Notes under the pieces: generated by a model
What the model was told of the DNA's origin: nothing
The model's database searches: none
What the model saw: the letters and a program-made list of their open reading frames with translations, nothing else
Translations under genes and position numbers: made by a program
NCBI RefSeq assembly: GCF_021869535.1
Contig: NW_026262745.1
Span: forward strand, 8,494,001 to 8,558,000
Length of the DNA stretch: 64,000 bases
DNA from: Mytilus californianus
Lineage: Eukaryota
Reading direction: 5' to 3'
In this document: positions 4,397 to 24,366 of the stretch, piece by piece
Layout: every line of letters begins with the position of its first letter
Position numbering within the stretch: the stretch's first letter is position 1

Positions 4397-6382
4397 TTAG
4401 TCACATGTTATTCTGTACATCTCTAAATACTCTCCACCAGCTATATAAAATGTTTCGTGATCATCATTGTCTAACCAGATATCCCGTGGATCCGTGATAG
4501 TGTCAAATTTGTTAAGAAGTGTTTTGTGTTTATTACCGTCTTCTGAGAGGACATGTAACGATCCTTTCTTATCTCGATCTACAACTAAAATTAGACCTGA
4601 CGGCAAAGCTATTATACATTCTGGGGTTTTAATCATCTCGTCTTTAAAGCAGTAAACGTCTTCCCCTTGAATTGTTATGCATTTGACTTCTTTGTCTTTT
4701 GTTGTAAAAATAATATTCTTTTTAGCTATATTCATGCCATTTATACCACAGTCTGTATTTGTAGAAAACACAGTTGTCATTTCCGTCGAACTATTTGGAC
4801 TTGCAGTCGAGACGAACTTTTTAATAGCTTCGTCTACAACTATGTAAATGTGTTTACCGTGTTTACATGATGCCCCGACGTAATCTTTATTAAAGGTCAA
4901 CAAAACGGGATTATTGATAAGGTCTCCAACTATCCCTGCTTTGTATAAAAACTTTTGTTCGAAAGGAGAAATAAAAATTTGATTTTGTTCTTTATCATAA
5001 CACAAACGACAAGCATCTTGTTCGAACTTTGTAGTGTTAATAACATGCCCAGTTTTTTTGTCAAATACCTGTAATATATTCTTTAATGATCTGTTACCAA
5101 GTATAATGTGATCATCTCCTACACATACTCCGCAGGATAAGTCCGATCCTTCGATGTGAAAACTATTAACCAATTCAACTCTGATATCTATAAACTGCGG
5201 TAGATATTTTATACCTAAATTTTTACAGCAATTTCGAATATCTTTCATTTGATTTTCCAAATCATGTTCTGTTTTGTTTAATATTCCCATACAATCAGCT
5301 GTTTCCAGCTGCTCTAAAATTTCGTTTTTCGCGAACTTGATGTCGAGTGTAGTCTCATGCTTGATAACCTTGTCTATTTCGATAAGGCTGGTCTTTATTT
5401 GATTCTTCAGAGTCTCAACATGAATGAAATGCTGTGTTTTGGTTCCAAACTCTTTAACAATTCTGTTAACAGTAATCCAGTGGTCTAAAATATCTACGAA
5501 TTGTTCAAGTAAACGTATTCGAATATTATAATTTGTATTTTGTTCGTCACGATATACATTTAACTGCTTCTTAAATGCCTCAAATAAAGCGTCTAGCTTA
5601 CATTTAACTTGTTCAAGAAACCTTCCTGCGTCGTTCCCTGCGTTTTCCAACTTCTCTTTAAGGTCGCGTTTTTCATCTTCTTTTTCGTTTAGAACTTTTA
5701 ATGTTGCTTGTTTGATACACTCTAGTTTATCCTGAAGTGTGTCGTACACACTATTAGAATTTGTAATTTCTTCAATTGACTTGACGCTTTCACAGTTCCA
5801 ATGATTTGTAGTTACGCACTGGATACAACATAACTGTTCATGGTTGAAACAAAAAGCTTCAATACTGTTAGATGGGTGTTCATTGCAATTCTCAGACACT
5901 GCATGCAAATCAAGTCCAGATACATTTGGTCCTAATTCCTCCAATGCAATTACTGGGTGTGAAGATAGAAGCCATGTGTGCATTGTGTTACATTTTTCAC
6001 ACAAAGTTTTTTCGCATCCCTCGCACCAGAACTTGGCAAGTGATATTTGTTGGTGCTGTTCACACACATTACAATCTTGTTGTTTATCTCCCTTTGTTGT
6101 AGAAATCATAATGGCAAGGATAAGATTATCTTGAAGTGCAGAAGACCATTCATCAACCGGTGCTTTCGGATTTCTCGGTTTCACGACTGATCTGCAAACT
6201 GGACATGTAAATTGGGTTAATTCACTGTTCTTGTTGCGTCCTATATTTAAAATATATTCGTGTATGCATTGTTTACAAAAGCTATGCATACAAGGTAAGA
6301 TTTTTGGTTGTTTAATTGCTTCAAAACATATCGGACAATTTAATAAATCTTCTTTATCTGCTTTCGCTTTACTCAACGCCAT
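4397..6382 (-). CDS. Intronless TRIM-family E3 ligase (RING, B-box1, B-box2, coiled coil, C-terminal NHL-like beta-propeller), about 661 aa
   Basis: Open 667-codon ORF. Likely start is ATG at 6382 in AAAATGG context (MALSKAKADKED). C3HC4 RING CPICF..LPCMHSFCKQC..CPVC; B-box1 CNVC..CEGCEKTLCEKCNTMH; B-box2 CNEH..FCFNHEQLCCIQC..H; helical charged middle region; propeller-like C-terminus (DPRDIWLD). Confidence 0.93.
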   Translation of the reverse strand: MALSKAKADKEDLLNCPICFEAIKQPKILPCMHSFCKQCIHEYILNIGRNKNSELTQFTCPVCRSVVKPRNPKAPVDEWSSALQDNLILAIMISTTKGDKQQDCNVCEQHQQISLAKFWCEGCEKTLCEKCNTMHTWLLSSHPVIALEELGPNVSGLDLHAVSENCNEHPSNSIEAFCFNHEQLCCIQCVTTNHWNCESVKSIEEITNSNSVYDTLQDKLECIKQATLKVLNEKEDEKRDLKEKLENAGNDAGRFLEQVKCKLDALFEAFKKQLNVYRDEQNTNYNIRIRLLEQFVDILDHWITVNRIVKEFGTKTQHFIHVETLKNQIKTSLIEIDKVIKHETTLDIKFAKNEILEQLETADCMGILNKTEHDLENQMKDIRNCCKNLGIKYLPQFIDIRVELVNSFHIEGSDLSCGVCVGDDHIILGNRSLKNILQVFDKKTGHVINTTKFEQDACRLCYDKEQNQIFISPFEQKFLYKAGIVGDLINNPVLLTFNKDYVGASCKHGKHIYIVVDEAIKKFVSTASPNSSTEMTTVFSTNTDCGINGMNIAKKNIIFTTKDKEVKCITIQGEDVYCFKDEMIKTPECIIALPSGLILVVDRDKKGSLHVLSEDGNKHKTLLNKFDTITDPRDIWLDNDDHETFYIAGGEYLEMYRITCD

Positions 6383-6772
6383 TTTGTTGCAATCCTTCAA
6401 ATTTATAAATAGCTTACCTCGTTTTGAATCGGTGTTAAAATATTACTATTTGTAGGTAAACACACGTGGGTAAACAGTCCTGTGAATATATACATTATTA
6501 ACCTTTTCAATAGTGTTTAAATCATGACTGTAATTATAAATGAATAAGAATAAAACCGTTGAAGAAGAGCTTATACAGATATCTTTATTTTTAAAAGATG
6601 GTTCAGAGACACTATCGATGGACATTCTACTGAAAGACTCGATAAATGTTCCTTAATTTGTTGTTTTGAGTAACTTAGCATGAATTACATGGTGGGACTG
6701 TTTAATTTTGTTACAAGCTACTTATATAAAAACAAGATGAGATCAACAGAGCTCAACCTACGGGATACGTAT

Positions 6773-15639: not shown

Positions 15640-17653
15640 TTAGTTAGGTGTAATTCTGTACATCTCCATGTACTCTCCACCAACAACAAACAATGTTTCG
15701 TAATCGTCATTGTCTAAAAAGATATCGCGAGGTTCTGTAATACTGTCGAACTTGTCAAGAATTCTTCTTTGTCTGGTACCGTCTTCAGAGAGGACATGCA
15801 ATGACCCTTCGTTAGCTCGATTAACAAATAAAGTTAAACCGGATGGCAACACGATTATACTTTCAATCGGTTTACTTTCTTCGTCATCAAAGCAGTACAC
15901 TTCATCTCCTTGAAGTGTTATGCATTTGATTTCGTTATCTTTTGTAGTAACAACAATCTTTCTTCGATAAACATTCATACCATTTACACCGCAATCTGTA
16001 TTTATAGCAACGACGGATGTCATTTCCTCTGAACTGTCGGGGCTTGCTGTCGAGGAAAATTTTTTAATGGCATTATCTACCACTATATAAATGTCTTCAC
16101 GATATTTGCACAATGCTCCCACATAATCATTATTAAAAATCAGCAACTCCGGCTCTTTAATGGCGTCCCTTGCTATCTCTGCTTTGTACAGTTGACTGGA
16201 TGCACACGAGATACATATTAGATTTTGGTCTTTGTCGTAACAGAAACGGCGAGGTTCCCCACTGAACTCAGTTGTATTTATAACAGTTCCAGTTTTTTTG
16301 TCAACTATCTGAAGTTCCTCCGACTCGGTACCAAGAACAATGTTGTCATTTCCTATACAAACTCCGCAGTATAATTCGGAACCATTGATATGATAAGTCT
16401 CAACTAATTCCACTCTGACATTCTCATATTCTGGATAAGGTGCACATCCAATATTTTACAGCACTTGTATATATCATCGGCTTGGCCAGCTAAATCGTTT
16501 TCCCCAATTTTATTAAATGTACCAATATTTTCTGCTGTTTCCAAGTGCAATTCATGCCAGATTTCTCAAGTGCTCTAAAATTTCATTCTTTATAAATATG
16601 AGGTCAAGTAAATGATCATTCCTTATGGCCTAAATTGTTTATTTGACGTACACTTGCTTTGAGTTGCTTCTTCAATGTGTCAACGTGGATAAAATATTGT
16701 GTTCTTGTCGCAAACTCTCTAACAACTCTGTCAACACTCATCCAGTGGTCTAAACTTGCAATTAATTGTTCCAGTAAACGTATTCGAATGTTGAAACTAG
16801 TATTTTCATCGTCACGAAATAAATGCAACTGTTTAGTAAATGTTTCAAACAAACAGTCTAGATTGGATTTAATCATAGCAAGAAACTCTTTAGCTTCTTC
16901 CTCCGTGTTATCGGTCATAGCTTTAAATTTGCTTTTTTGTTGTTCCTTTTCTTTTAAAAGTTTAATTGTTGCGTATTTAATGCTTTCGAGTTTATCATGA
17001 AGAGTGATGCAAACGTCGTCAGAACCGGTTGTTTCTTCAATCGATTTAACGTTTTCACAGCACCGGTGGTTTGAAGAGACGCACTGAATACAGCATAGCT
17101 GTTCGTGTTTGAAACAAAAAGCTTCGATATTATTCGTTGGGTGTGTATTGCATTGTTCTGAGATTGCATGTAAATCAATTCCAGATGTATTAGATCCCAG
17201 GTCTTCAAGAGCAACAACAAGATGTGTAGAGGAAAGCTTCATCCAGCTGTGCATTGTATTACATTTTTCACAGAAAGTTTCATCACATTCTTTGCACCAG
17301 AACTTGGCCACGGACTGTTGTTGGTGTCGTTTACAGGCACCACAGTCTTGTTGTTGGTCTTCCTTGTTTCTTGCAATCATAATTGATAGAATAAGATTAT
17401 TTTGAAGTGCCGCTGACCATTCATCTGTAGTTGCTTTAACATCTTTAGGTTTCACAACTGACTTGCAAACTGGACATGAAAACTGGGTTAGTTTACTATT
17501 CTTGTTCCGCCCCATATTTAAAATGTGTTCGTGGATGCATTGCTTACAAAATAAATGAAGAATAGGTAAAATTTTCGGCTGTTTAACTGTTTCTGAACAG
17601 ATCGGACAACTAAATAAATGTAACTGAACCTCTTTCGGTTTAGATAACGCCAT
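15640..17653 (-). pseudogene. TRIM paralog of 4397-6382, disrupted by three frameshifts and loss of a RING cysteine
   Basis: ORFs 16616-17653 (RING/B-boxes/coiled coil) and 15640-16413 (propeller) align end to end with the 4397-6382 protein. Against that paralog there is a +1 shift near 16630, a 25-nt insertion at 16549-16573 and a -1 shift near 16440 (net +1, matching the offset between the two ORFs). RING LPCMHSF has become LPILHLF. Confidence 0.9.
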
Positions 17654-17966
17654 TTTTCTGTCTTTGTTTCTGTTGATTTACTTCCGCTATACTGCGCTTT
17701 ATTTATAACAGTAATTTGTAAATGAGGCTACCTTAATTGTTTGTATATGTTGGATAAAATTTTGCCAGGTTTTATAAACTCTAACCTTACTTTTTACTGA
17801 TTAAAACAAATATGAAATTGTTAAACGATCGTTTAAGTATATCTTAAAATTTAGCGAAGCCAATATCACTAATATTATTTATAATCAAGTGTTTAATTTT
17901 CACAGGTAAGCGAGCAAACAATGTGTGTTTACATTTTCCACATTATTGACCACGTGTGAAAACAAA
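17654..17966. promoter_or_regulatory. Short divergent promoter region shared by the TRIM pseudogene and the selenoprotein gene
   Basis: Start codons point away from each other with 313 bp between them. ETS-like ACTTCCGC at 17680-87 and E-box CACGTG at 17951-56. Confidence 0.55.
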
Positions 17967-18118
17967 ATGGCTAGTGACAAATCTATTGCAGATGAACTTG
18001 GAAAGATTACTTTGTTTTCCAAAGAGGGCTCTGAGATACTTGCGAATGTCGTTCTACCTAAGGATATCAAAAAATATTCTTTATTGGTTTTCTTAAGAAA
18101 TCTGGCATGAATTGCATG
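17967..18118 (+). CDS. Selenoprotein coding exon 1, containing the Sec TGA at 18108-18110
   Basis: ATG in AAAATGG context. The frame continues past TGA as ATT GCA TG into a strong GTAAGT donor at 18119. Confidence 0.88.
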
Positions 18119-21100
18119 GTAAGTGTAATTTCTTCACTTTGACTGCATGATAACTTGTTTAAAATTTACCAGACTGAGACCTAACGTATTGAAAATATTT
18201 AAATCGGTTTCCCAACCGTTTTCATTTTTTCATATCTCAAAATGCCTACCCTCAAGTTCTTATTGACACTTTCCGTAATGAATTGTGAAAAAACTACCTG
18301 TCTTCCTATAAAACATACTAGGTAAACAAATTCAGCAAATAAAAAGGAATTCATGGCTTCCTATATCTATCATATGGCTGTCAAGAAAGAAACTTTTACT
18401 ACATAAAACCTCTTTTGTACCACCTTACACAACTTCAGCTGTTGATCCAAAGATGGATTATCGCTAGGTTATACGTACTATATATCAAACAAAATCAATT
18501 TTATTAGTTTAAAATCCAAACAATAGGATTCACTGTGTCTAATCTACCCAAGCAAAAAATGTTTGGACTCGATGGTATCTAATATCCGGCACGGTGACGG
18601 AAAATCAATAGACAGAGAAAAGGTAGTTTTCTGTTTATTTATTTGTTATTGTTATGATATCGGAGAATATATATACATATATAACTGTTTTATATTGTGA
18701 GATGTAATTTTTTCTACAACCGTTCTAGATTAACAGAGAAATAAGAAAAAATGCACGTCAAAATGACGAATTGAGTGAATCTTGCCTCGAATTTGTTTAA
18801 TTTCTCCTTAAATTGTTCACATAGTACGGAAAGAAAGGTACTGAAAGAAAGATATTGACATGGAGATTGCAAAACTAGTCACTTTGAGCACTTCAATCCT
18901 TGTATTTCTGCGTATGGAACCAAAGAAATAGGTCATGTCAAAATGGAAGCACCCGGTTTTTATCAATGTTGTTTACTACACAATGACCCGGTTTTGTCTA
19001 TGTATAGAACCCGGTTTTGTTCATTTTATGAAAAACAACGTTAACACTGGTACCCTGAAACAAAAAAATAAATTAACAAATGGCTGATCATGTGGGTTTT
19101 CAAACCAGATACTTCAATGAAGCTTGTGGCCAAGTTTAATTAAATTGTTAAAGAGGAGAAGATTGTTGTTAGTTAATTGGCAAAAACGCAAAGAAATGGT
19201 AAAAATCGTAATTAAAGGTCAATAATTCTTACAAGGATATCGACCAAGTTGACTTATTCGTATATATTGTCTTGCTGATCATTTTTTCTATATAACTTTT
19301 ATATATTTCAAGATAATAGACAGAAATGGAAAAAAAGGAGAAATTTGTCATTCAAGGACATTGACTTCTATAAGAATTCGTGTGAGAGTTTTGATGTGTA
19401 TGGACAAAAGGTAGAGCTCAACATTATGAACATATCAGCCCCTGTTAAATTTTCTCTATCTATAGCTGTTTTCAAATAATAGACAAAACTTGCATCCCCC
19501 TATGTTCTATTTTAAGCCATGTCGGCCATCTTTGTTGACAAGCGGGGGTCATCAAAAACTTTTTAAACTAGATACATGTACCCCAATGATGATGAAAAAC
19601 AGTTAAACATAAGTTCGTTAGACCTTTTAAAACCGACATAAGATTGTGGATAAGGTTTGTTAAATGTATTGTAGCCCAGTAATTTCAGAGGAGAAGATTA
19701 TGTAAAAAATGGACGACACACTAAATTCCAAAACATATAAACGAACCAAAATTAAAAAACATACAAGACTAACAAAGGCGAGAGGCTCCTGACTTGGGAC
19801 AGGCGCAAAAATGTGGCCGGGTTAAACATGTTTTTTGAGATCTCAACCCTCCCCCTATAACTCTAACCAATGTAAAATAAACAAACACACAGCAATACGC
19901 ACAGTAAAACTCAGTTAATTAAAAGTCCGAGTTGTGAATATTTGAATATATTTACCTATGTTGAAAGACATGCATAATGTCAAATCATAAAAATACAAAT
20001 GGTTTAGTCTCTAAGAAACTTGTAAGATTTCTGCTACTATTTTTGCCAAATAAGTGCAATTTTGGTACTCGTCGCAATTTGGGAACTGTGACGTTCAATA
20101 ACAAAACGATAGACAGAAAACAATACAAACATGTAGCATTGAAAAAAAAAATGTAAATATTTATTACAATACTATTTTTCACAACATGCCTCCTCTATAA
20201 AGTTATCATTTCAAATATCTTGATTATTTATATTATAATGTTAGTCACGAATCATACACAGTTCATGCATTGACATTATAGTTGTTTCCCTCATTTTACA
20301 TTTCACTTATACTGTAACGTGTGAAATTTTGAAATGTCTAGATCCAAGTGGTATCATAGGAAAATGATGTTCTGTTTCAAAATATTTTATGTTTTTGTAG
20401 TCAGATGAAGATTCAGGCCTTTCGCCAAATCGAGTCAACACTTACTCAGAATGACATCAGGCTTGTCTTCATCAGCAACTCTACATCAGAGCAGACGACA
20501 GAATTCTTGCAGATTACAACAGTGTCCGTATGTGGAGATCTATTCTCGGATCCACAACTTCATCTGTATAAATTGTTCAGTTTAAAGAGGGGTCGGTTCA
20601 GATCACTTTTTATGCCTATTGTTTCTGGTTTGCGAAAATATGGAATGAAAGGAGTAACTGAAGGTATGAGCAAAACAGAACTTATTAACTCAAGTTTTTG
20701 TGAAAAAATCTGAAGTTCCATAATTAAAGGACACATACGAAAAATTACATTTGATGGCGTATATGGAAAATTGCTATCAAATATTTAACTATGTTTGCCT
20801 ATATCATGTATATTGTTATACTGGGGTGAATGAGCAAGTTTATTCCGATTGCGTCATTAAGCACAGGCACTTGTCTCAGAATTTTTCCCCTATATACCTT
20901 AATATAACGTGTTATATTAAGGTATATAGGAAAAAAAATTCTGAGACAAGTACCTGTGTCATTAAGTCTGAACTTGACTACAATAGTTGCTCGAAGTTAA
21001 ACTTGCGCTACCATGATTTGTTTTTGTTCTTCTTGTATTAATTGTTAATTCATGTTTTATTGTTTCGTTATTCAATGAAATCTGTAACCATGTATGCAAA

Positions 21101-24100
21101 CACAGTTATAGCCTCTACAAATAATGATTATTAATTTATAAGGCGATTGGAATTACAGTGTATGGATATAAGTTTGGACTTTGGACAATAATTTCTGTGG
21201 AAAAATGGTTAAAAGTGGAATTCATAGCAAAAATTTGCAAATAACGAATACTTATCCATGCACGTAAAATTAAACATCTGCTAAAATCAAAAAGAAAATA
21301 TGCTTATCGAGACAATAAGCGTATCTAAAATAATTCCCGTTTGGTAAAGATAATTTTTTAAGAAGCTATCTTTGTTAACCTTGCATCACTTTGTAACAAG
21401 TATTTGTAAGTCGTGAAAATTTATTAATGACTTTAAAATACCTACAGGTATTAAACTTGGTTACGAAACCGGACATCTAGCAGGAGATTCCTGGCAACAA
21501 GGTGGAACTGTTATCTTAGACACAGAAGCCAACATTAAATATGTGGTAAGTTGTATTTCAAATGTCAGTTTCCATTCATGACTCAATATATAAATAGCAG
21601 AGACGTCTCTGCAAATAGGTACCTATGCCAGGTATTCGGATGAAGTACTCAAATATGAAAAGTAGTGGATTTGAATGAGACTATTATCCTTGTTTGTTTT
21701 AGTGATGGGCCTGCAGGACTTAAACTCGCGCCGAACCATACTCTATACAATTATAAGCTGACCTGTGCTTGTAGTACGAATAATTCCCTACATGTCTCTT
21801 CCGTATTTCAGAAGTAATTTCAGGGGACATTTTTAAAGTTCGAATGTTCGTTCATTAAATTATTTCAATCAAATGTTGATTTTCTAGGACCTGTAGTACA
21901 GTCATTGCAGTTGGTACATTGTTTGTGCAATAATACAGTTCTTTCCTCTAAGCTTATATAATCCACTTTGTGACATTTATTTCTAAAAAAAAAATATTTG
22001 TATTCCATTTCTTGCAAATATAACTTTTCTGTCCAGCGTTTAAATGTATTCTGGTACAACTATCTTTCGGGAGTTGATATACCAGATTAAACGTATGTGA
22101 TATAATTTTCATGTTCTATTCGATACCATTTGATTTCGTTCTAGATACATTCCAAACCTGAGATTAATTACTCTTTGACATGTGAATACTTTGCAATATC
22201 GATTTAAGAATGGATATTGTGAGTGATTTGAACACAATGGGTTTTTGTCGAGCCTTCGACTTTTGTCGAAAAAAGCGAGACATAGCGATCCTACATTCCG
22301 TCGGCGTCATCGTCGTCGTCGGCGGCGTCCACAAATATTCACTCTGTGGTAAAGTTTTTGAAATTTTAATAACTTTCTTAAACTATCCTGGATTTCTACC
22401 AAACTTTGACAGAAGCTTGTTTATGATCATAAGATAATATTCAAAAGTAAATTTTGTTAAAAAAAAATTCTATTTTTTCCGTATTTAACTTATAAATGGA
22501 CTTAGTTTTTCTGCCAAGAAACATTACATTCACTCTGTGGTTAAAGTTTTTGAAATTTTAATAACTTTCTTAAACTATCCTGGATTTCTACCAAACTTGG
22601 AAAGAAGCTTGTTTATGATCATAAGATAGTATCCAGAAGTAAATTTTGTAAAAAAAAAAATCCATTTTTTCCGTATTTTACTTATAAATGGACTTAGTTT
22701 TTCTGCCAAGAAACATTACATTCACTCTGTGGTTGAAGTTTTTGAAATTTTAATAACTTTCTTAAACTATCCTGGATTTCTACCAAACATGGAAAGAAGC
22801 TTGTTTATGATCATAAGATAGTATCCAGAAGTAAATTTTGTAAAAAAAAAATCCATTTTTTCCGTATTTTACTTATAAATGGACTTAGTTTTTCTGCCAG
22901 TTAACATTACATTCACTCAGTGGTTAAAGTTTTTAAAATTTTAACAACTTTCTTAAACTATCCTGGATTTGTACCAAACTTGGACAGAAGCTTGTTTATG
23001 ATTAAAAGCTAGTATCTAGAAGGAAATTTTGTTAAAATTTTGTTTGATTTTTTCCGTATTTTACTTATAAATGGACTTTGTTTTTCTTCCAGTTAACATT
23101 ACATACAGTCTGCAGTTTAAGTTTTTAAAACATTTATTAGATTCATAAACTATCCTGGATTTTTACCAAACTTGGACAGAAGCTACTAACAATCAAAAGA
23201 TAGTATAGAGAGGAATATTTTTATTTATTTTTTTCCTCATTTTTGTTGAGCCTGCGATTAACAGCAAAAGTAGGCGAGACACTGGGTTCCGCGGAACCCT
23301 TACAAATTTTTTCTTTAAATATTTTTATTCTGGTATTCTAGCTAAACCTTACTTTATGTATTTTTAAGATATGATCTACCTATGTATCAAGTAGTGATCA
23401 GTAGTTATCTACAAATAATCTACATATAATTCGTATACAAGTCAACAAGTCTTTTCTCTCTCTAAGGGGGCGTTTATTAAGGACTCAAGAAGCTTCATTG
23501 GTAACTTTATATCCAATTCCAATCCCTGGCCTTCTTTACTCATAATATATGAATATAAAGTAGGCTATAACAGATGTGTGTGTTATTTAACATGAAGCTA
23601 TAGTTTTCATGTAGACAGAGCTTTGTTACATGTGATTAAAAGAAGAGCAGGGTAAAAACCAGTGAAATAGAAATTTAATTTCTGTATTCTTTGATTTTTC
23701 TGCCATATTTCTCTATTCTTTATATTTTTTGTTGATTATTCTTTATTCTTTATATTTAAGCACCCCATTATTCTCTATTCTTTATATTTAAGCACCCCAT
23801 TATTCTCTATTCTTTATCAACATATCTTTATTTTTTTTGGTACATTTTTCTCTATTGTTTATATTTTTTCCCCATTATTCTCTATTTATTCAGTAAACCC
23901 CCATCCAGACCCTCATATTTTGCTGAATGATTTTCCTCTAAGTGTTTTTTTGTAGGTTCATGCTTTGTTGTAACATTGACTTTGTTTTGCTTTCAGCATG
24001 TTGAAGAGCACCCAGCTGATTGGCCAGACATGGAAAAGGTTCTCCCCTTGATGGGAATTCAAAATACTTCTATAGATTACAAGATGGCTGTTAATGATTG

Positions 24101-24137
24101 GCTAAAAGCTAGAGAGGAATCTACAAGCAAATCTTAA
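17967..24137 (+). CDS. PRXL2C: Peroxiredoxin-like 2 (AhpC/TSA_2, PRXL2C/AAED1 or SelU-type) selenoprotein, 217 aa, U48xxC51 motif
   Basis: Exons 17967-18118, 20401-20663, 21448-21545 and 23997-24137 (654 nt). All introns are GT-AG with consistent phases. Spliced protein: MASDKSIADELG..LLVFLRNLA-U-IAC-QMKIQAF..IRLVFIS..DLFSDPQLHLYKLFSLKRG..GDSWQQGGTVILDTEANIKYVHVEEHPADWPDMEKVLPLMGIQ..STSKS*. These motifs match, from memory, PRXL2C FVRHFLCYIC, DPEREIYKRLGMKRG, GDPAQQGGTLIL and VLQLVGVQ. The TGA at 18108-18110 occupies the first redox Cys position. The symbol is a family-level best match, not a tested orthology. Confidence 0.9.
20401..20663 (+). CDS. Selenoprotein coding exon 2
   Basis: Acceptor tttttgtag ends at 20400. 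T20401 completes TGT (Cys51). Donor GTATGA at 20664 (phase 1). Confidence 0.9.
20862..20958. mobile_element. 97-bp fold-back MITE with 8-bp TSD in selenoprotein intron 2
   Basis: Arms of 47 and 48 nt are near-perfect complements around a 2-nt centre. TCATTAAG is duplicated at 20854-61 and 20959-66. Confidence 0.88.
21448..21545 (+). CDS. Selenoprotein coding exon 3 (GDSWQQGG motif)
   Basis: Acceptor cctacag. Encodes GIKLGYETGHLAGDSWQQGGTVILDTEANIKYV. Donor GTAAGT at 21546. Confidence 0.9.
22242..23310 (+). mobile_element. Helentron-type non-autonomous element carrying a roughly 191-bp tandem array (about 5 units), in selenoprotein intron 3
   Basis: GTC microsatellite near the 5' end. Unit starts at 22337, 22528, 22720, 22911 and about 23102. 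Perfect 16-bp palindrome GGGTTCCGCGGAACCC at 23284-99 near the 3' end. Confidence 0.75.
23997..24137 (+). CDS. Selenoprotein coding exon 4 (terminal)
   Basis: Acceptor tttgttttgctttcag. Encodes HVEEHPADWPDMEKVLPLMGIQNTSIDYKMAVNDWLKAREESTSKS, then TAA TAA. Confidence 0.88.
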   Translation, partial: HVEEHPADWPDMEKVLPLMGIQNTSIDYKMAVNDWLKAREESTSKS

Positions 24138-24303: not shown

Positions 24304-24366
24304 GATGATAGAATGATGGTTGATCTATAAAGACATGGTCACTAATCAGCCTGATGGTAAATCATC
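24304..24366 (+). promoter_or_regulatory. Eukaryotic SECIS element (form 2) in the selenoprotein 3' UTR
   Basis: Helix I GATGAT(24304-09)/ATCATC(24361-66). Core ATGAT(24313-17)/TGAT(24352-55) gives the tandem G.A/A.G quartet. Helix II GGTTGAT(24318-24)/ATCAGCC(24345-51), extendable by 2 bp over a bulged C. Unpaired AAA at 24329-31, 11 nt above the core. Apical mini-stem GAC-ATG-GTC. Confidence 0.9.

What the first reader, a model, noticed from the sequence alone, without database searches (positions are those of the whole stretch)
16542..18116. The TRIM pseudogene carries an exact 21-nt copy of the neighbouring selenoprotein's Sec-codon region, inserted as a frameshift
Seen in the sequence: relative to the intact paralog (NEILEQLETA), the pseudogene has a 25-nt insertion. 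On the minus strand it reads GCACTTG-AGAAATCTGGCATGAATT-GCACTTG, with the 7-bp direct repeats at 16542-48 and 16567-73. AGAAATCTGGCATGAATTGCA (16566-16546, minus) is identical to selenoprotein exon 1 at 18096-18116, spanning the Sec TGA, and the match is 24 of 25 nt with the flanking CTT. The two copies form an inverted repeat 1.5 kb apart. Established knowledge: short templated insertions with junction microhomology and a small duplication are the signature of polymerase-theta-mediated end joining or template switching, usually copying nearby sequence. Inference: a break in the TRIM gene was repaired using the divergently transcribed neighbour as template and knocked the gene out. Speculatively, a plus-strand transcript across 16546-66 would be a 21-nt antisense to the Sec codon, and the TRIM transcript would be a sense decoy for it.
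Basis: partly seen in the sequence, partly recalled or inferred. Interest (0 to 1): 0.85.

Follow-up and report, generated by a model that had tools for sequence, protein, structure and literature searches.

The report
Templated 25-nt insertion in TRIM pseudogene
A decaying TRIM gene of the California mussel carries a 25-base insertion whose new letters were copied, in reverse orientation, from the selenoprotein gene 1.5 kb away; it is a clean natural example of a known kind of repair or replication scar, with no sign of a function.

Summary
The 21-mer is exact at 16546-16566 (-) and 18096-18116 (+). It and the 18 truly new bases occur nowhere else in the 1.65-Gb genome, which I take to be Mytilus californianus.

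Orthologous loci from M. coruscus (97.9% identical), M. galloprovincialis and M. trossulus all lack the 25-nt insertion. The donor 21-mer in selenoprotein exon 1 is invariant in all four species. So the copy went from the exon into the TRIM gene, in the M. californianus lineage. The junctions carry 3-nt microhomologies (CTT, GCA) and a 7-nt duplication. This fits a microhomology-mediated templated insertion, by polymerase-theta snap-back or by replicative template switching.

The claim that the insertion knocked the gene out is not shown:
- It is one of three lineage-specific frameshifts (+4, +25, -1) within 190 bp.
- The +4 lies upstream and already gives the stop at 16616-16618.
- A zinc-binding RING cysteine is also lost.
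- M. coruscus has its own frameshift in the same gene.

A dispersed ~165-bp repeat family matches the 21-mer at 19-20 of 21 positions (134 hits). That is probably one chance match multiplied by copy number. The antisense and decoy idea has no support. This is a known kind of mutation, of modest interest. Read support could not be checked.

The parts
16549..16573 (-). The 25-nt insertion. Placement is ambiguous by 7 nt and could equally be 16542-16566. It consists of 18 novel nt (16549-16566) plus a duplicated GCACTTG.
   Evidence: Absent from two paralogs and from the orthologs of M. coruscus, M. galloprovincialis and M. trossulus.
16546..16566 (-). The 21-nt copy identical to selenoprotein exon 1. 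The copied TGA lies at 16554-16552.
16542..16548 (-). Downstream copy of the 7-nt direct repeat GCACTTG. Its first 3 nt (GCA) are microhomology with the donor.
16567..16573 (-). Upstream copy of the 7-nt direct repeat GCACTTG. Its CTT matches the donor's CTT one base before the copied stretch.
18096..18116 (+). The donor 21-mer in selenoprotein exon 1, spanning the Sec codon TGA at 18108-18110.
   Evidence: Invariant in four Mytilus species. 18 of 21 with the TGA kept in a more distant mussel contig.
15640..17653 (-). TRIM pseudogene (RING, B-box, coiled coil, C-terminal beta-propeller) with three frameshifts and no nonsense substitutions.
   Evidence: Pfam; alignments; blastx to Mytilus orthologs.
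16632..16635 (-). A second, M. californianus-specific frameshift (+4). It puts the stop codon at 16616-16618 into frame, upstream of the 25-nt insertion in the reading direction.
16443..16445 (-). A third, M. californianus-specific frameshift (-1) with an adjacent substitution.
17562..17563 (-). A TG-to-AT change that replaces a zinc-binding RING cysteine with isoleucine, in M. californianus only.
17967..18118 (+). Selenoprotein exon 1. It ends ...TGA ATT GCA TG|gt. The split codon is completed by T at 20401, giving Cys and the motif U-I-A-C.
   Evidence: The Cys homolog P0016 has ACVSC at this position.
20401..20663 (+). Selenoprotein exon 2 (AhpC-TSA_2 domain).
21448..21545 (+). Selenoprotein exon 3.
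23997..24137 (+). Selenoprotein last exon, with its stop codon.
24305..24365 (+). SECIS candidate with the AUGA, AAA and UGAU motifs.
   Evidence: Rfam SECIS_1, 26 bits against a curated cut-off of 35.
4397..6400 (-). Intact 667-aa TRIM paralog, used as the uninserted reference.

Best explanation
In the Mytilus californianus lineage, after its split from M. coruscus, a DNA 3' end in the TRIM gene at ...GAGCACTTG switched template. It primed on the same strand about 1.5 kb upstream, at exon 1 of the divergently oriented PRXL2/SelU-type selenoprotein gene. CTT microhomology with a terminal G-T mispair served as the primer site. The polymerase copied 18-21 nt (AGAAATCTGGCATGAATT-GCA). The end then returned to the TRIM sequence through the 3-nt microhomology GCA, landing 7 nt behind the point of departure, so GCACTTG was copied twice. 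The result is a 25-nt inverted templated insertion that shifts the frame. Shown: the identity, its uniqueness in the genome, the direction from exon to TRIM, the lineage specificity and the junction anatomy. Inferred: the pathway, which is either polymerase-theta end joining of the snap-back type or replicative template switching (FoSTeS/MMBIR); the two cannot be separated from sequence. The insertion is one of three frameshifts in a gene already losing constraint. It has no demonstrated function, and that it holds the Sec codon is incidental.
For: - The 21-mer and the novel 18-mer are exact at these two sites only, in 1.65 Gb.
- The chance expectation is 8e-7 matches within +/-5 kb.
- No other 16-mer or longer is shared between the pseudogene and the window, apart from homologous positions in the paralog.
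- The insertion is absent from two paralogs and from three orthologs at 88-98% identity in syntenic loci.
- With the insertion removed, the site is identical to the M. galloprovincialis sequence.
- The donor is invariant in four Mytilus species and encodes the conserved A-U/C-x-x-C motif.
- Exon 1 is single-copy in the genome.
- PMC7454005 describes POLQ-dependent templated insertions of 2-35 bp, copied from adjacent sequence or from many kb away. It includes a snap-back class and microhomology at both initiation and completion.
Against: - No sequencing reads were available, so an assembly or polishing error is not excluded.
- The left microhomology is separated from the copied tract by one mismatch.
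- According to the literature, templates are more usually within tens of bases of the break than 1.5 kb away.
- A repeat family carries a 17/18 (20/21) look-alike at about 130 places.
- Only one haplotype of one individual was seen.
Confidence: 0.8

Rival explanations
1. All three clustered frameshifts (+4, +25, -1) and the adjacent substitution came from one error-prone repair or break-induced replication tract, not from three separate events. This is a variant of the best explanation, not an alternative to templating.
For: The three M. californianus-specific indels lie within 190 bp of a 2034-bp gene. The probability of that for three random sites is 0.025. A lineage-specific substitution at 16443 abuts the -1 deletion.
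Against: The 16 M. californianus-specific substitutions are spread over the gene with no cluster at 16440-16640. Three indels to 16 substitutions is about what neutral decay of a pseudogene gives (my own estimate from general knowledge). The +4 and -1 have no traceable template.
Confidence: 0.2
2. Assembly or polishing artefact: the 25 nt are not in the animal's DNA.
For: No reads could be inspected. The region has three frameshifts close together.
Against: A consensus error would not write an exact inverted copy of a unique sequence 1.5 kb away, flanked by a precise 7-nt duplication. The rest of the gene aligns cleanly at 97.9% to M. coruscus. No alternative haplotig of the locus is in the assembly.
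Confidence: 0.05
3. The insert was copied from a member of the dispersed ~165-bp repeat family (units holding AAAAATCTGGCATGAATTGYA), and its identity to the exon is secondary.
For: There are 134 hits at up to 2 mismatches against 1 for the control, and two copies match at 20 of 21. The repeat also shares GCAC at the right junction.
Against: No repeat copy has the exact 18-mer or 21-mer. None lies in the window even at 3 mismatches. An exact match to a conserved exon 1.5 kb away would then be a coincidence of about 1e-6. Similarity between the exon and the repeat does not extend beyond the 21-mer: local alignment score 27 against a background mean of 16 and maximum of 43. Neighbouring exon 21-mers each have 2-3 single chance hits at up to 2 mismatches. 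So one such hit falling in a high-copy family is unremarkable.
Confidence: 0.02
4. The copy is functional, acting as a sense decoy or as the source of a 21-nt antisense RNA against the Sec-codon region of the selenoprotein mRNA.
For: Only the exact 21-nt identity and the shared intergenic region of about 310 bp.
Against: It is present in one lineage only, inside a gene with two other frameshifts and a lost RING cysteine. The TRIM-sense transcript carries the same sense as the mRNA and cannot pair with it. No small-RNA or structural signal was found: Rfam gives nothing at 16500-16600. No expression data were available.
Confidence: 0.02

Closest known systems
[quoted passage not shown]
   Same: A short insert (18-21 nt, within the reported 2-35 bp range) copied in inverted orientation from the same strand upstream. 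Microhomology occurs at both initiation (CTT) and completion (GCA). The flanking sequence is duplicated (PMC7454005; PMC7165422 listed).
   Different: The template is 1.5 kb away rather than within tens of bases. One mismatch separates the left microhomology from the copied tract. Dependence on POLQ cannot be tested. This is a germline, evolutionary event seen in one assembly.
Replicative short template switching (Loytynoja and Goldman model; FoSTeS/MMBIR)
   Same: An inverted copy of nearby sequence appears as a complex insertion in a lineage comparison. The return to the original template behind the departure point explains the 7-nt duplication (PMC5453318 and PMC8421209, listed).
   Different: By their titles and abstracts these events are short-range, local events, and here the donor is 1.5 kb away. 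No replacement of the original sequence accompanies the insertion.
Transposon excision footprint with target-site duplication
   Same: A 7-bp direct repeat flanks a short foreign stretch.
   Different: The 18 nt between the repeats match a conserved single-copy exon exactly. They do not match the termini of any element. The look-alike motif in the repeat family is internal to its unit.

Membership tests
Microhomology-mediated templated insertion (TMEJ / template-switch class) | The inserted bases are identical to a pre-existing sequence elsewhere, beyond chance. | tested here: met
   18/18 and 21/21 exact. It is the only other copy in 1.65 Gb and lies 1.5 kb away. Expected 8e-7 within +/-5 kb.
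Microhomology-mediated templated insertion (TMEJ / template-switch class) | The insertion is derived: it is absent from the ancestral state of the recipient. | tested here: met
   Absent in three orthologs (97.9%, 89.9%, 88.1% identity) and two paralogs.
Microhomology-mediated templated insertion (TMEJ / template-switch class) | The template is older than the insertion. | tested here: met
   The donor 21-mer is invariant in four Mytilus species. It encodes the conserved U/CxxC motif.
Microhomology-mediated templated insertion (TMEJ / template-switch class) | Microhomology between recipient and template at both junctions. | tested here: met
   GCA (3 nt) is contiguous on one side. CTT (3 nt) on the other side lies one mismatched base from the tract. 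The stretches are short, so this is weak on its own.
Microhomology-mediated templated insertion (TMEJ / template-switch class) | Dependence on polymerase theta, as against a replicative polymerase. | not testable with these tools
   Sequence alone does not separate the pathways.
Microhomology-mediated templated insertion (TMEJ / template-switch class) | The insertion is real in the DNA of the organism (read support). | not testable with these tools
   No reads were available. There is no second haplotig in the assembly and no other record of the ORFs.
TRIM-type E3 ligase gene (RING, B-box, coiled coil, C-terminal beta-propeller) | RING and B-box domains. | tested here: met
   Pfam zf-C3HC4 at 30.8 bits and zf-B_box at 27.3 bits in the 345-aa ORF. 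A RING cysteine is replaced.
TRIM-type E3 ligase gene (RING, B-box, coiled coil, C-terminal beta-propeller) | An intact reading frame. | tested here: not met
   Three frameshifts relative to the intact 661-aa M. galloprovincialis ortholog and the M. trossulus ortholog, whose frame stays open for 665 codons. It is a pseudogene.
PRXL2/SelU-type selenoprotein (AhpC-TSA_2 fold) | AhpC-TSA_2 domain. | tested here: met
   PF13911 at 27.0 bits, equal to the cut-off of 27, on exon 2 alone. The precomputed annotation of the orthologs also gives PF13911.
PRXL2/SelU-type selenoprotein (AhpC-TSA_2 fold) | An in-frame TGA at the first position of the redox motif, conserved across species. | tested here: met
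   U-I-A-C with the split codon TG|T. The TGA is kept in five mussel sequences. The Cys homolog has A-C-V-S-C.
PRXL2/SelU-type selenoprotein (AhpC-TSA_2 fold) | A SECIS element in the 3' UTR. | tested here: inconclusive
   SECIS_1 at 26 bits, below the curated 35. It has the AUGA, AAA and UGAU motifs and starts 168 nt after the stop codon.
Transposon excision footprint | The bases between the duplicated target sites match the termini of an element. | tested here: not met
   They match a single-copy exon exactly. The look-alike repeat motif is internal to its unit and matches only 17 of 18.

The most novel reading that the evidence does not exclude
The three clustered frameshifts are the scar of a single mutagenic repair event at a locus with a shared bidirectional promoter. 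Physical or transcriptional proximity of the divergent pair made the neighbour's first exon the template. If so, divergently transcribed neighbours would be preferred donors for kilobase-range templated insertions in bivalve germlines. A functional decoy or antisense role for the copied Sec-codon context is a remoter possibility still.
Probability: 0.1. Interest if true: 0.5.

Novelty: new member of a known kind. Interest (0 to 1): 0.3.

Why it matters
This is a well-polarised natural example of a templated insertion. The donor, the recipient, the ancestral state and the lineage are all identified. The donor lies 1.5 kb away in inverted orientation, in a mollusc, a group where such scars have hardly been catalogued. 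It could serve as a positive control for genome-wide scans for template-switch mutations in bivalves. It also documents lineage-specific decay of one member of the expanded mussel TRIM family. It says nothing new about selenoprotein biology, because the copied Sec codon is incidental.

Tried and rejected
- **Chance.** Rejected on the match statistics.
- **A common repeat.** The exact 21-mer and 18-mer are unique to the two sites. A repeat family gives 134 hits at up to 2 mismatches, so I fetched 23 loci holding copies of it and built a consensus of the ~165-bp unit from 27 copies. Similarity to the exon does not extend beyond the motif. Two control 21-mers from the same exon gave 2-3 single chance hits each. 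I read the family match as one chance hit multiplied by copy number.
- **Ancestral TRIM sequence.** Rejected by three orthologs and two paralogs.
- **Transposon footprint.** Rejected (see the membership test).
- **The older M. galloprovincialis scaffold.** L048 (UYJE01005939.1) has no exon 1 or TRIM gene within reach, and its exon 2 appears three times, so it could not be used. The newer chromosome assembly gave the locus (L050).
- **Other individuals or transcripts.** A look-up of contigs encoding the two pseudogene ORFs found nothing on record.
- **Homolog search by length.** The search for homologous proteins with the 345-aa piece returned only 52%-identical kin because of its length window. 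The orthologs came from the search with the full-length paralog.
- No contig that I take for human was met.

Full report
**What is in the sequence**

On the minus strand, 16573-16542 reads GCACTTG AGAAATCTGGCATGAATT GCACTTG. The plus strand at 18092-18118 reads CTTA AGAAATCTGGCATGAATTGCA TG, followed by gtaagt. The 21-mer is exact at 16546-16566 (-) and 18096-18116 (+). No third match occurs in the window, even with 3 mismatches, and none of 100 shuffles reaches two matches.

**Whole-genome check**

- The window is G000:C165:8494001-8558000 of a 1.65-Gb assembly.
- The exact 21-mer and the 18 bases that are truly new in the TRIM gene occur only at these two places.
- A composition-aware estimate gives 0.13 chance copies of the 18-mer in the genome, and 8e-7 within +/-5 kb.
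- Apart from homologous positions in the paralog, this is the only 16-mer or longer that the pseudogene shares with the rest of the window.
- Exon 1 is single-copy at the DNA level.

At up to 2 mismatches the 21-mer has 134 hits, against 1 for the reversed control. All belong to one dispersed family built of ~165-bp tandem units that hold AAAAATCTGGCATGAATTGYA. I read this as one chance hit multiplied by copy number, for these reasons:

- The best copies are 20 of 21 (17 of 18 in the novel part), and none is exact.
- None lies in the window.
- Local alignment of the exon region to the repeat consensus scores 27, against a background mean of 16 and a maximum of 43. The likeness therefore does not extend beyond the motif.
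- Two neighbouring 21-mers of the same exon each have 2-3 isolated chance hits at up to 2 mismatches.

If the repeat were the source, the exact identity with a conserved exon 1.5 kb away would be unexplained.

**What the two genes are**

*The recipient* (15640-17653, minus strand) has RING and B-box domains. It is 70-71% identical in DNA to two intact 667-aa paralogs, one at 4397-6400 and one just upstream of the window.

*The donor gene* is a PRXL2/SelU-type selenoprotein:

- Exon 2 matches AhpC-TSA_2.
- Exon 1 ends TGA ATT GCA TG|gt, and exon 2 starts with T after an AG acceptor. The motif is therefore U-I-A-C.
- A Cys-containing homolog has A-C-V-S-C at this position, and most database homologs start at the Met just after the UGA, which is what mis-called selenoproteins would look like.
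- Exons 3 and 4 and a SECIS candidate follow. The SECIS scores 26 bits, below the curated 35, but has the AUGA, AAA and UGAU motifs.

**Which organism**

A hit named Mytilus californianus sits on a contig of 140,809,528 bases. That is the exact length of G000:C88. I therefore take the genome to be M. californianus.

**Polarity and age**

A search with the intact paralog, followed by blastx against the pseudogene, found its orthologs:

| Species | Protein | Identity to the N-terminal ORF | Locus | DNA identity to the pseudogene |
|---|---|---|---|---|
| M. coruscus | P0031 | 98.6% | L049 | 97.9% |
| M. galloprovincialis | P0030 | 89.7% | L050 | 89.9% |
| M. trossulus | P0032 | 84.4% | L051 | 88.1% |

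L050 and L051 carry a called AhpC-TSA_2 gene divergent from the TRIM gene. All three loci hold selenoprotein exon 1 on the opposite strand upstream of it. So synteny holds.

In the four-species alignment all three orthologs lack the 25 nt. With the insertion removed, the M. californianus site is letter for letter the M. galloprovincialis sequence TTTTAGAGCACTTGGAAACAGCAG. The donor 21-mer, together with its flanking TA and TGGT, is invariant in all four species. A more distant mussel contig keeps 18 of 21 with the TGA. The copy therefore went from the exon into the TRIM gene, in the M. californianus lineage after the split from M. coruscus.

**Mechanism (inferred)**

The insert on the TRIM coding strand equals the exon on the opposite strand. 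The template was therefore the same physical strand, 1.5 kb upstream.

1. A 3' end ...CACTTG can pair with the template's TAAG through CTT, plus a terminal G-T mispair.
2. Synthesis of AGAAATCTGGCATGAATTGCA follows.
3. Re-annealing through GCA, 7 nt behind the departure point, re-copies GCACTTG. This gives the 7-nt duplication and a 25-nt net gain.

The anatomy matches the snap-back class of POLQ-dependent templated insertions. These are 2-35 bp long, have templates either adjacent or many kb away, and show microhomology at initiation and at completion (PMC7454005). It equally fits replicative template switching (PMC5453318 and PMC8421209, listed). Sequence cannot choose between the two.

**Did it knock the gene out? 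Not shown**

- Relative to all three orthologs and both paralogs, the pseudogene has three frameshifts: +4 at 16632-16635, +25, and -1 at about 16445.
- The +4 lies upstream of the 25-nt insertion in the reading direction. It brings the stop at 16616-16618 into frame, so the longest product is the 345-aa ORF whatever the 25 nt do.
- Without the 25 nt, the +4 and -1 would still leave about 60 codons out of frame.
- M. californianus has also changed TG to AT at 17562-17563, replacing a zinc-binding RING cysteine.
- M. coruscus has its own 5-nt insertion in the RING region, with a stop at codon 46. The M. galloprovincialis and M. trossulus genes are intact.
- No lesion is shared. The gene seems to be decaying in the californianus/coruscus clade, and the first hit cannot be named.

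The three indels lie within 190 bp (P = 0.025 for random placement). That leaves room for a single error-prone repair tract. However, the 16 lineage-specific substitutions do not cluster there.

**The decoy and antisense idea**

The TRIM-sense transcript would carry the same sense as the selenoprotein mRNA and cannot pair with it. Nothing in Rfam marks the site. The copy sits in a decaying gene of one lineage. I give this idea about 2%.

**Earlier notes of the scan**

The notes on the selenoprotein and its SECIS agree with what I found.

**Limits**

- No reads were available, so assembly error is not excluded.
- Only one haplotype of one animal was seen.
- No expression data were available.

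**Verdict**

The core reading, a templated insertion copied from the neighbouring gene, is well supported and now polarised by outgroups. The knock-out claim and the regulatory speculation are not supported. This is a known kind of mutation, and the example is clean but ordinary.

Noticed in passing
G000-wide; examples L003:1420-1620, L006:840-1700, L038: A dispersed repeat family made of ~165-bp tandem units (GGGGCATAACTC...GATCGGCACTGATTTTCGAACTTGTCCGAGACATTGCTGATATAAACC...AAAAATCTGGCATGAATTGTACACATGAGAGCGCTAAC). At least 134 places match the 21-mer at up to 2 mismatches. One copy (L008) runs into an ACGG-like microsatellite. It resembles the satellite-bearing non-autonomous elements described in bivalves (from memory, not tested).
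   Followed up: partly
window 20858-20961: A near-perfect ~100-nt hairpin in intron 2 of the selenoprotein gene. It gives sub-threshold Rfam hits to many unrelated miRNA families on both strands, best 55 bits against a cut-off of 83. It looks like a MITE-type palindrome rather than a miRNA.
   Followed up: no
L049:about 6070-6080 (M. coruscus ortholog; aligns at window 17588): The M. coruscus ortholog of the TRIM pseudogene has its own 5-nt insertion (GTAAT) in the RING region, with a stop at codon 46. The database model (P0031, 615 aa) starts at a downstream Met. This looks like independent decay of the same gene in the sister species.
   Followed up: partly
window 17562-17563: A dinucleotide change, TG to AT, replaces a conserved RING cysteine with isoleucine, in M. 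californianus only.
   Followed up: partly
L048:8290-10315 (M. galloprovincialis UYJE01005939.1): In the older M. galloprovincialis scaffold, exon 2 of the selenoprotein appears three times in tandem about 840 bp apart (79-90% identical to the window). Exon 1 and the TRIM gene are not found within 8 kb upstream. The newer chromosome assembly (L050) has the normal arrangement. This is either structural variation or an assembly problem.
   Followed up: no
window 22210-23012: An array of units about 190 bp apart in intron 3 of the selenoprotein gene, seen as four 30-aa ORFs that all read MV(K/E)VF(E/K)IL(I/T)TFLNYPGF(L/V)PN..RSLFMI.. (the motif also lies inside a 75-aa ORF).
   Followed up: no
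window 17654-17966: Only about 310 bp separate the start codons of the TRIM pseudogene and the selenoprotein. The part nearest the selenoprotein ATG (TTTACATTTTCCAC.TTATTGACCACGT.TGAAAACAA.ATG) is almost invariant in four Mytilus species. This is a likely shared or core promoter.
   Followed up: no
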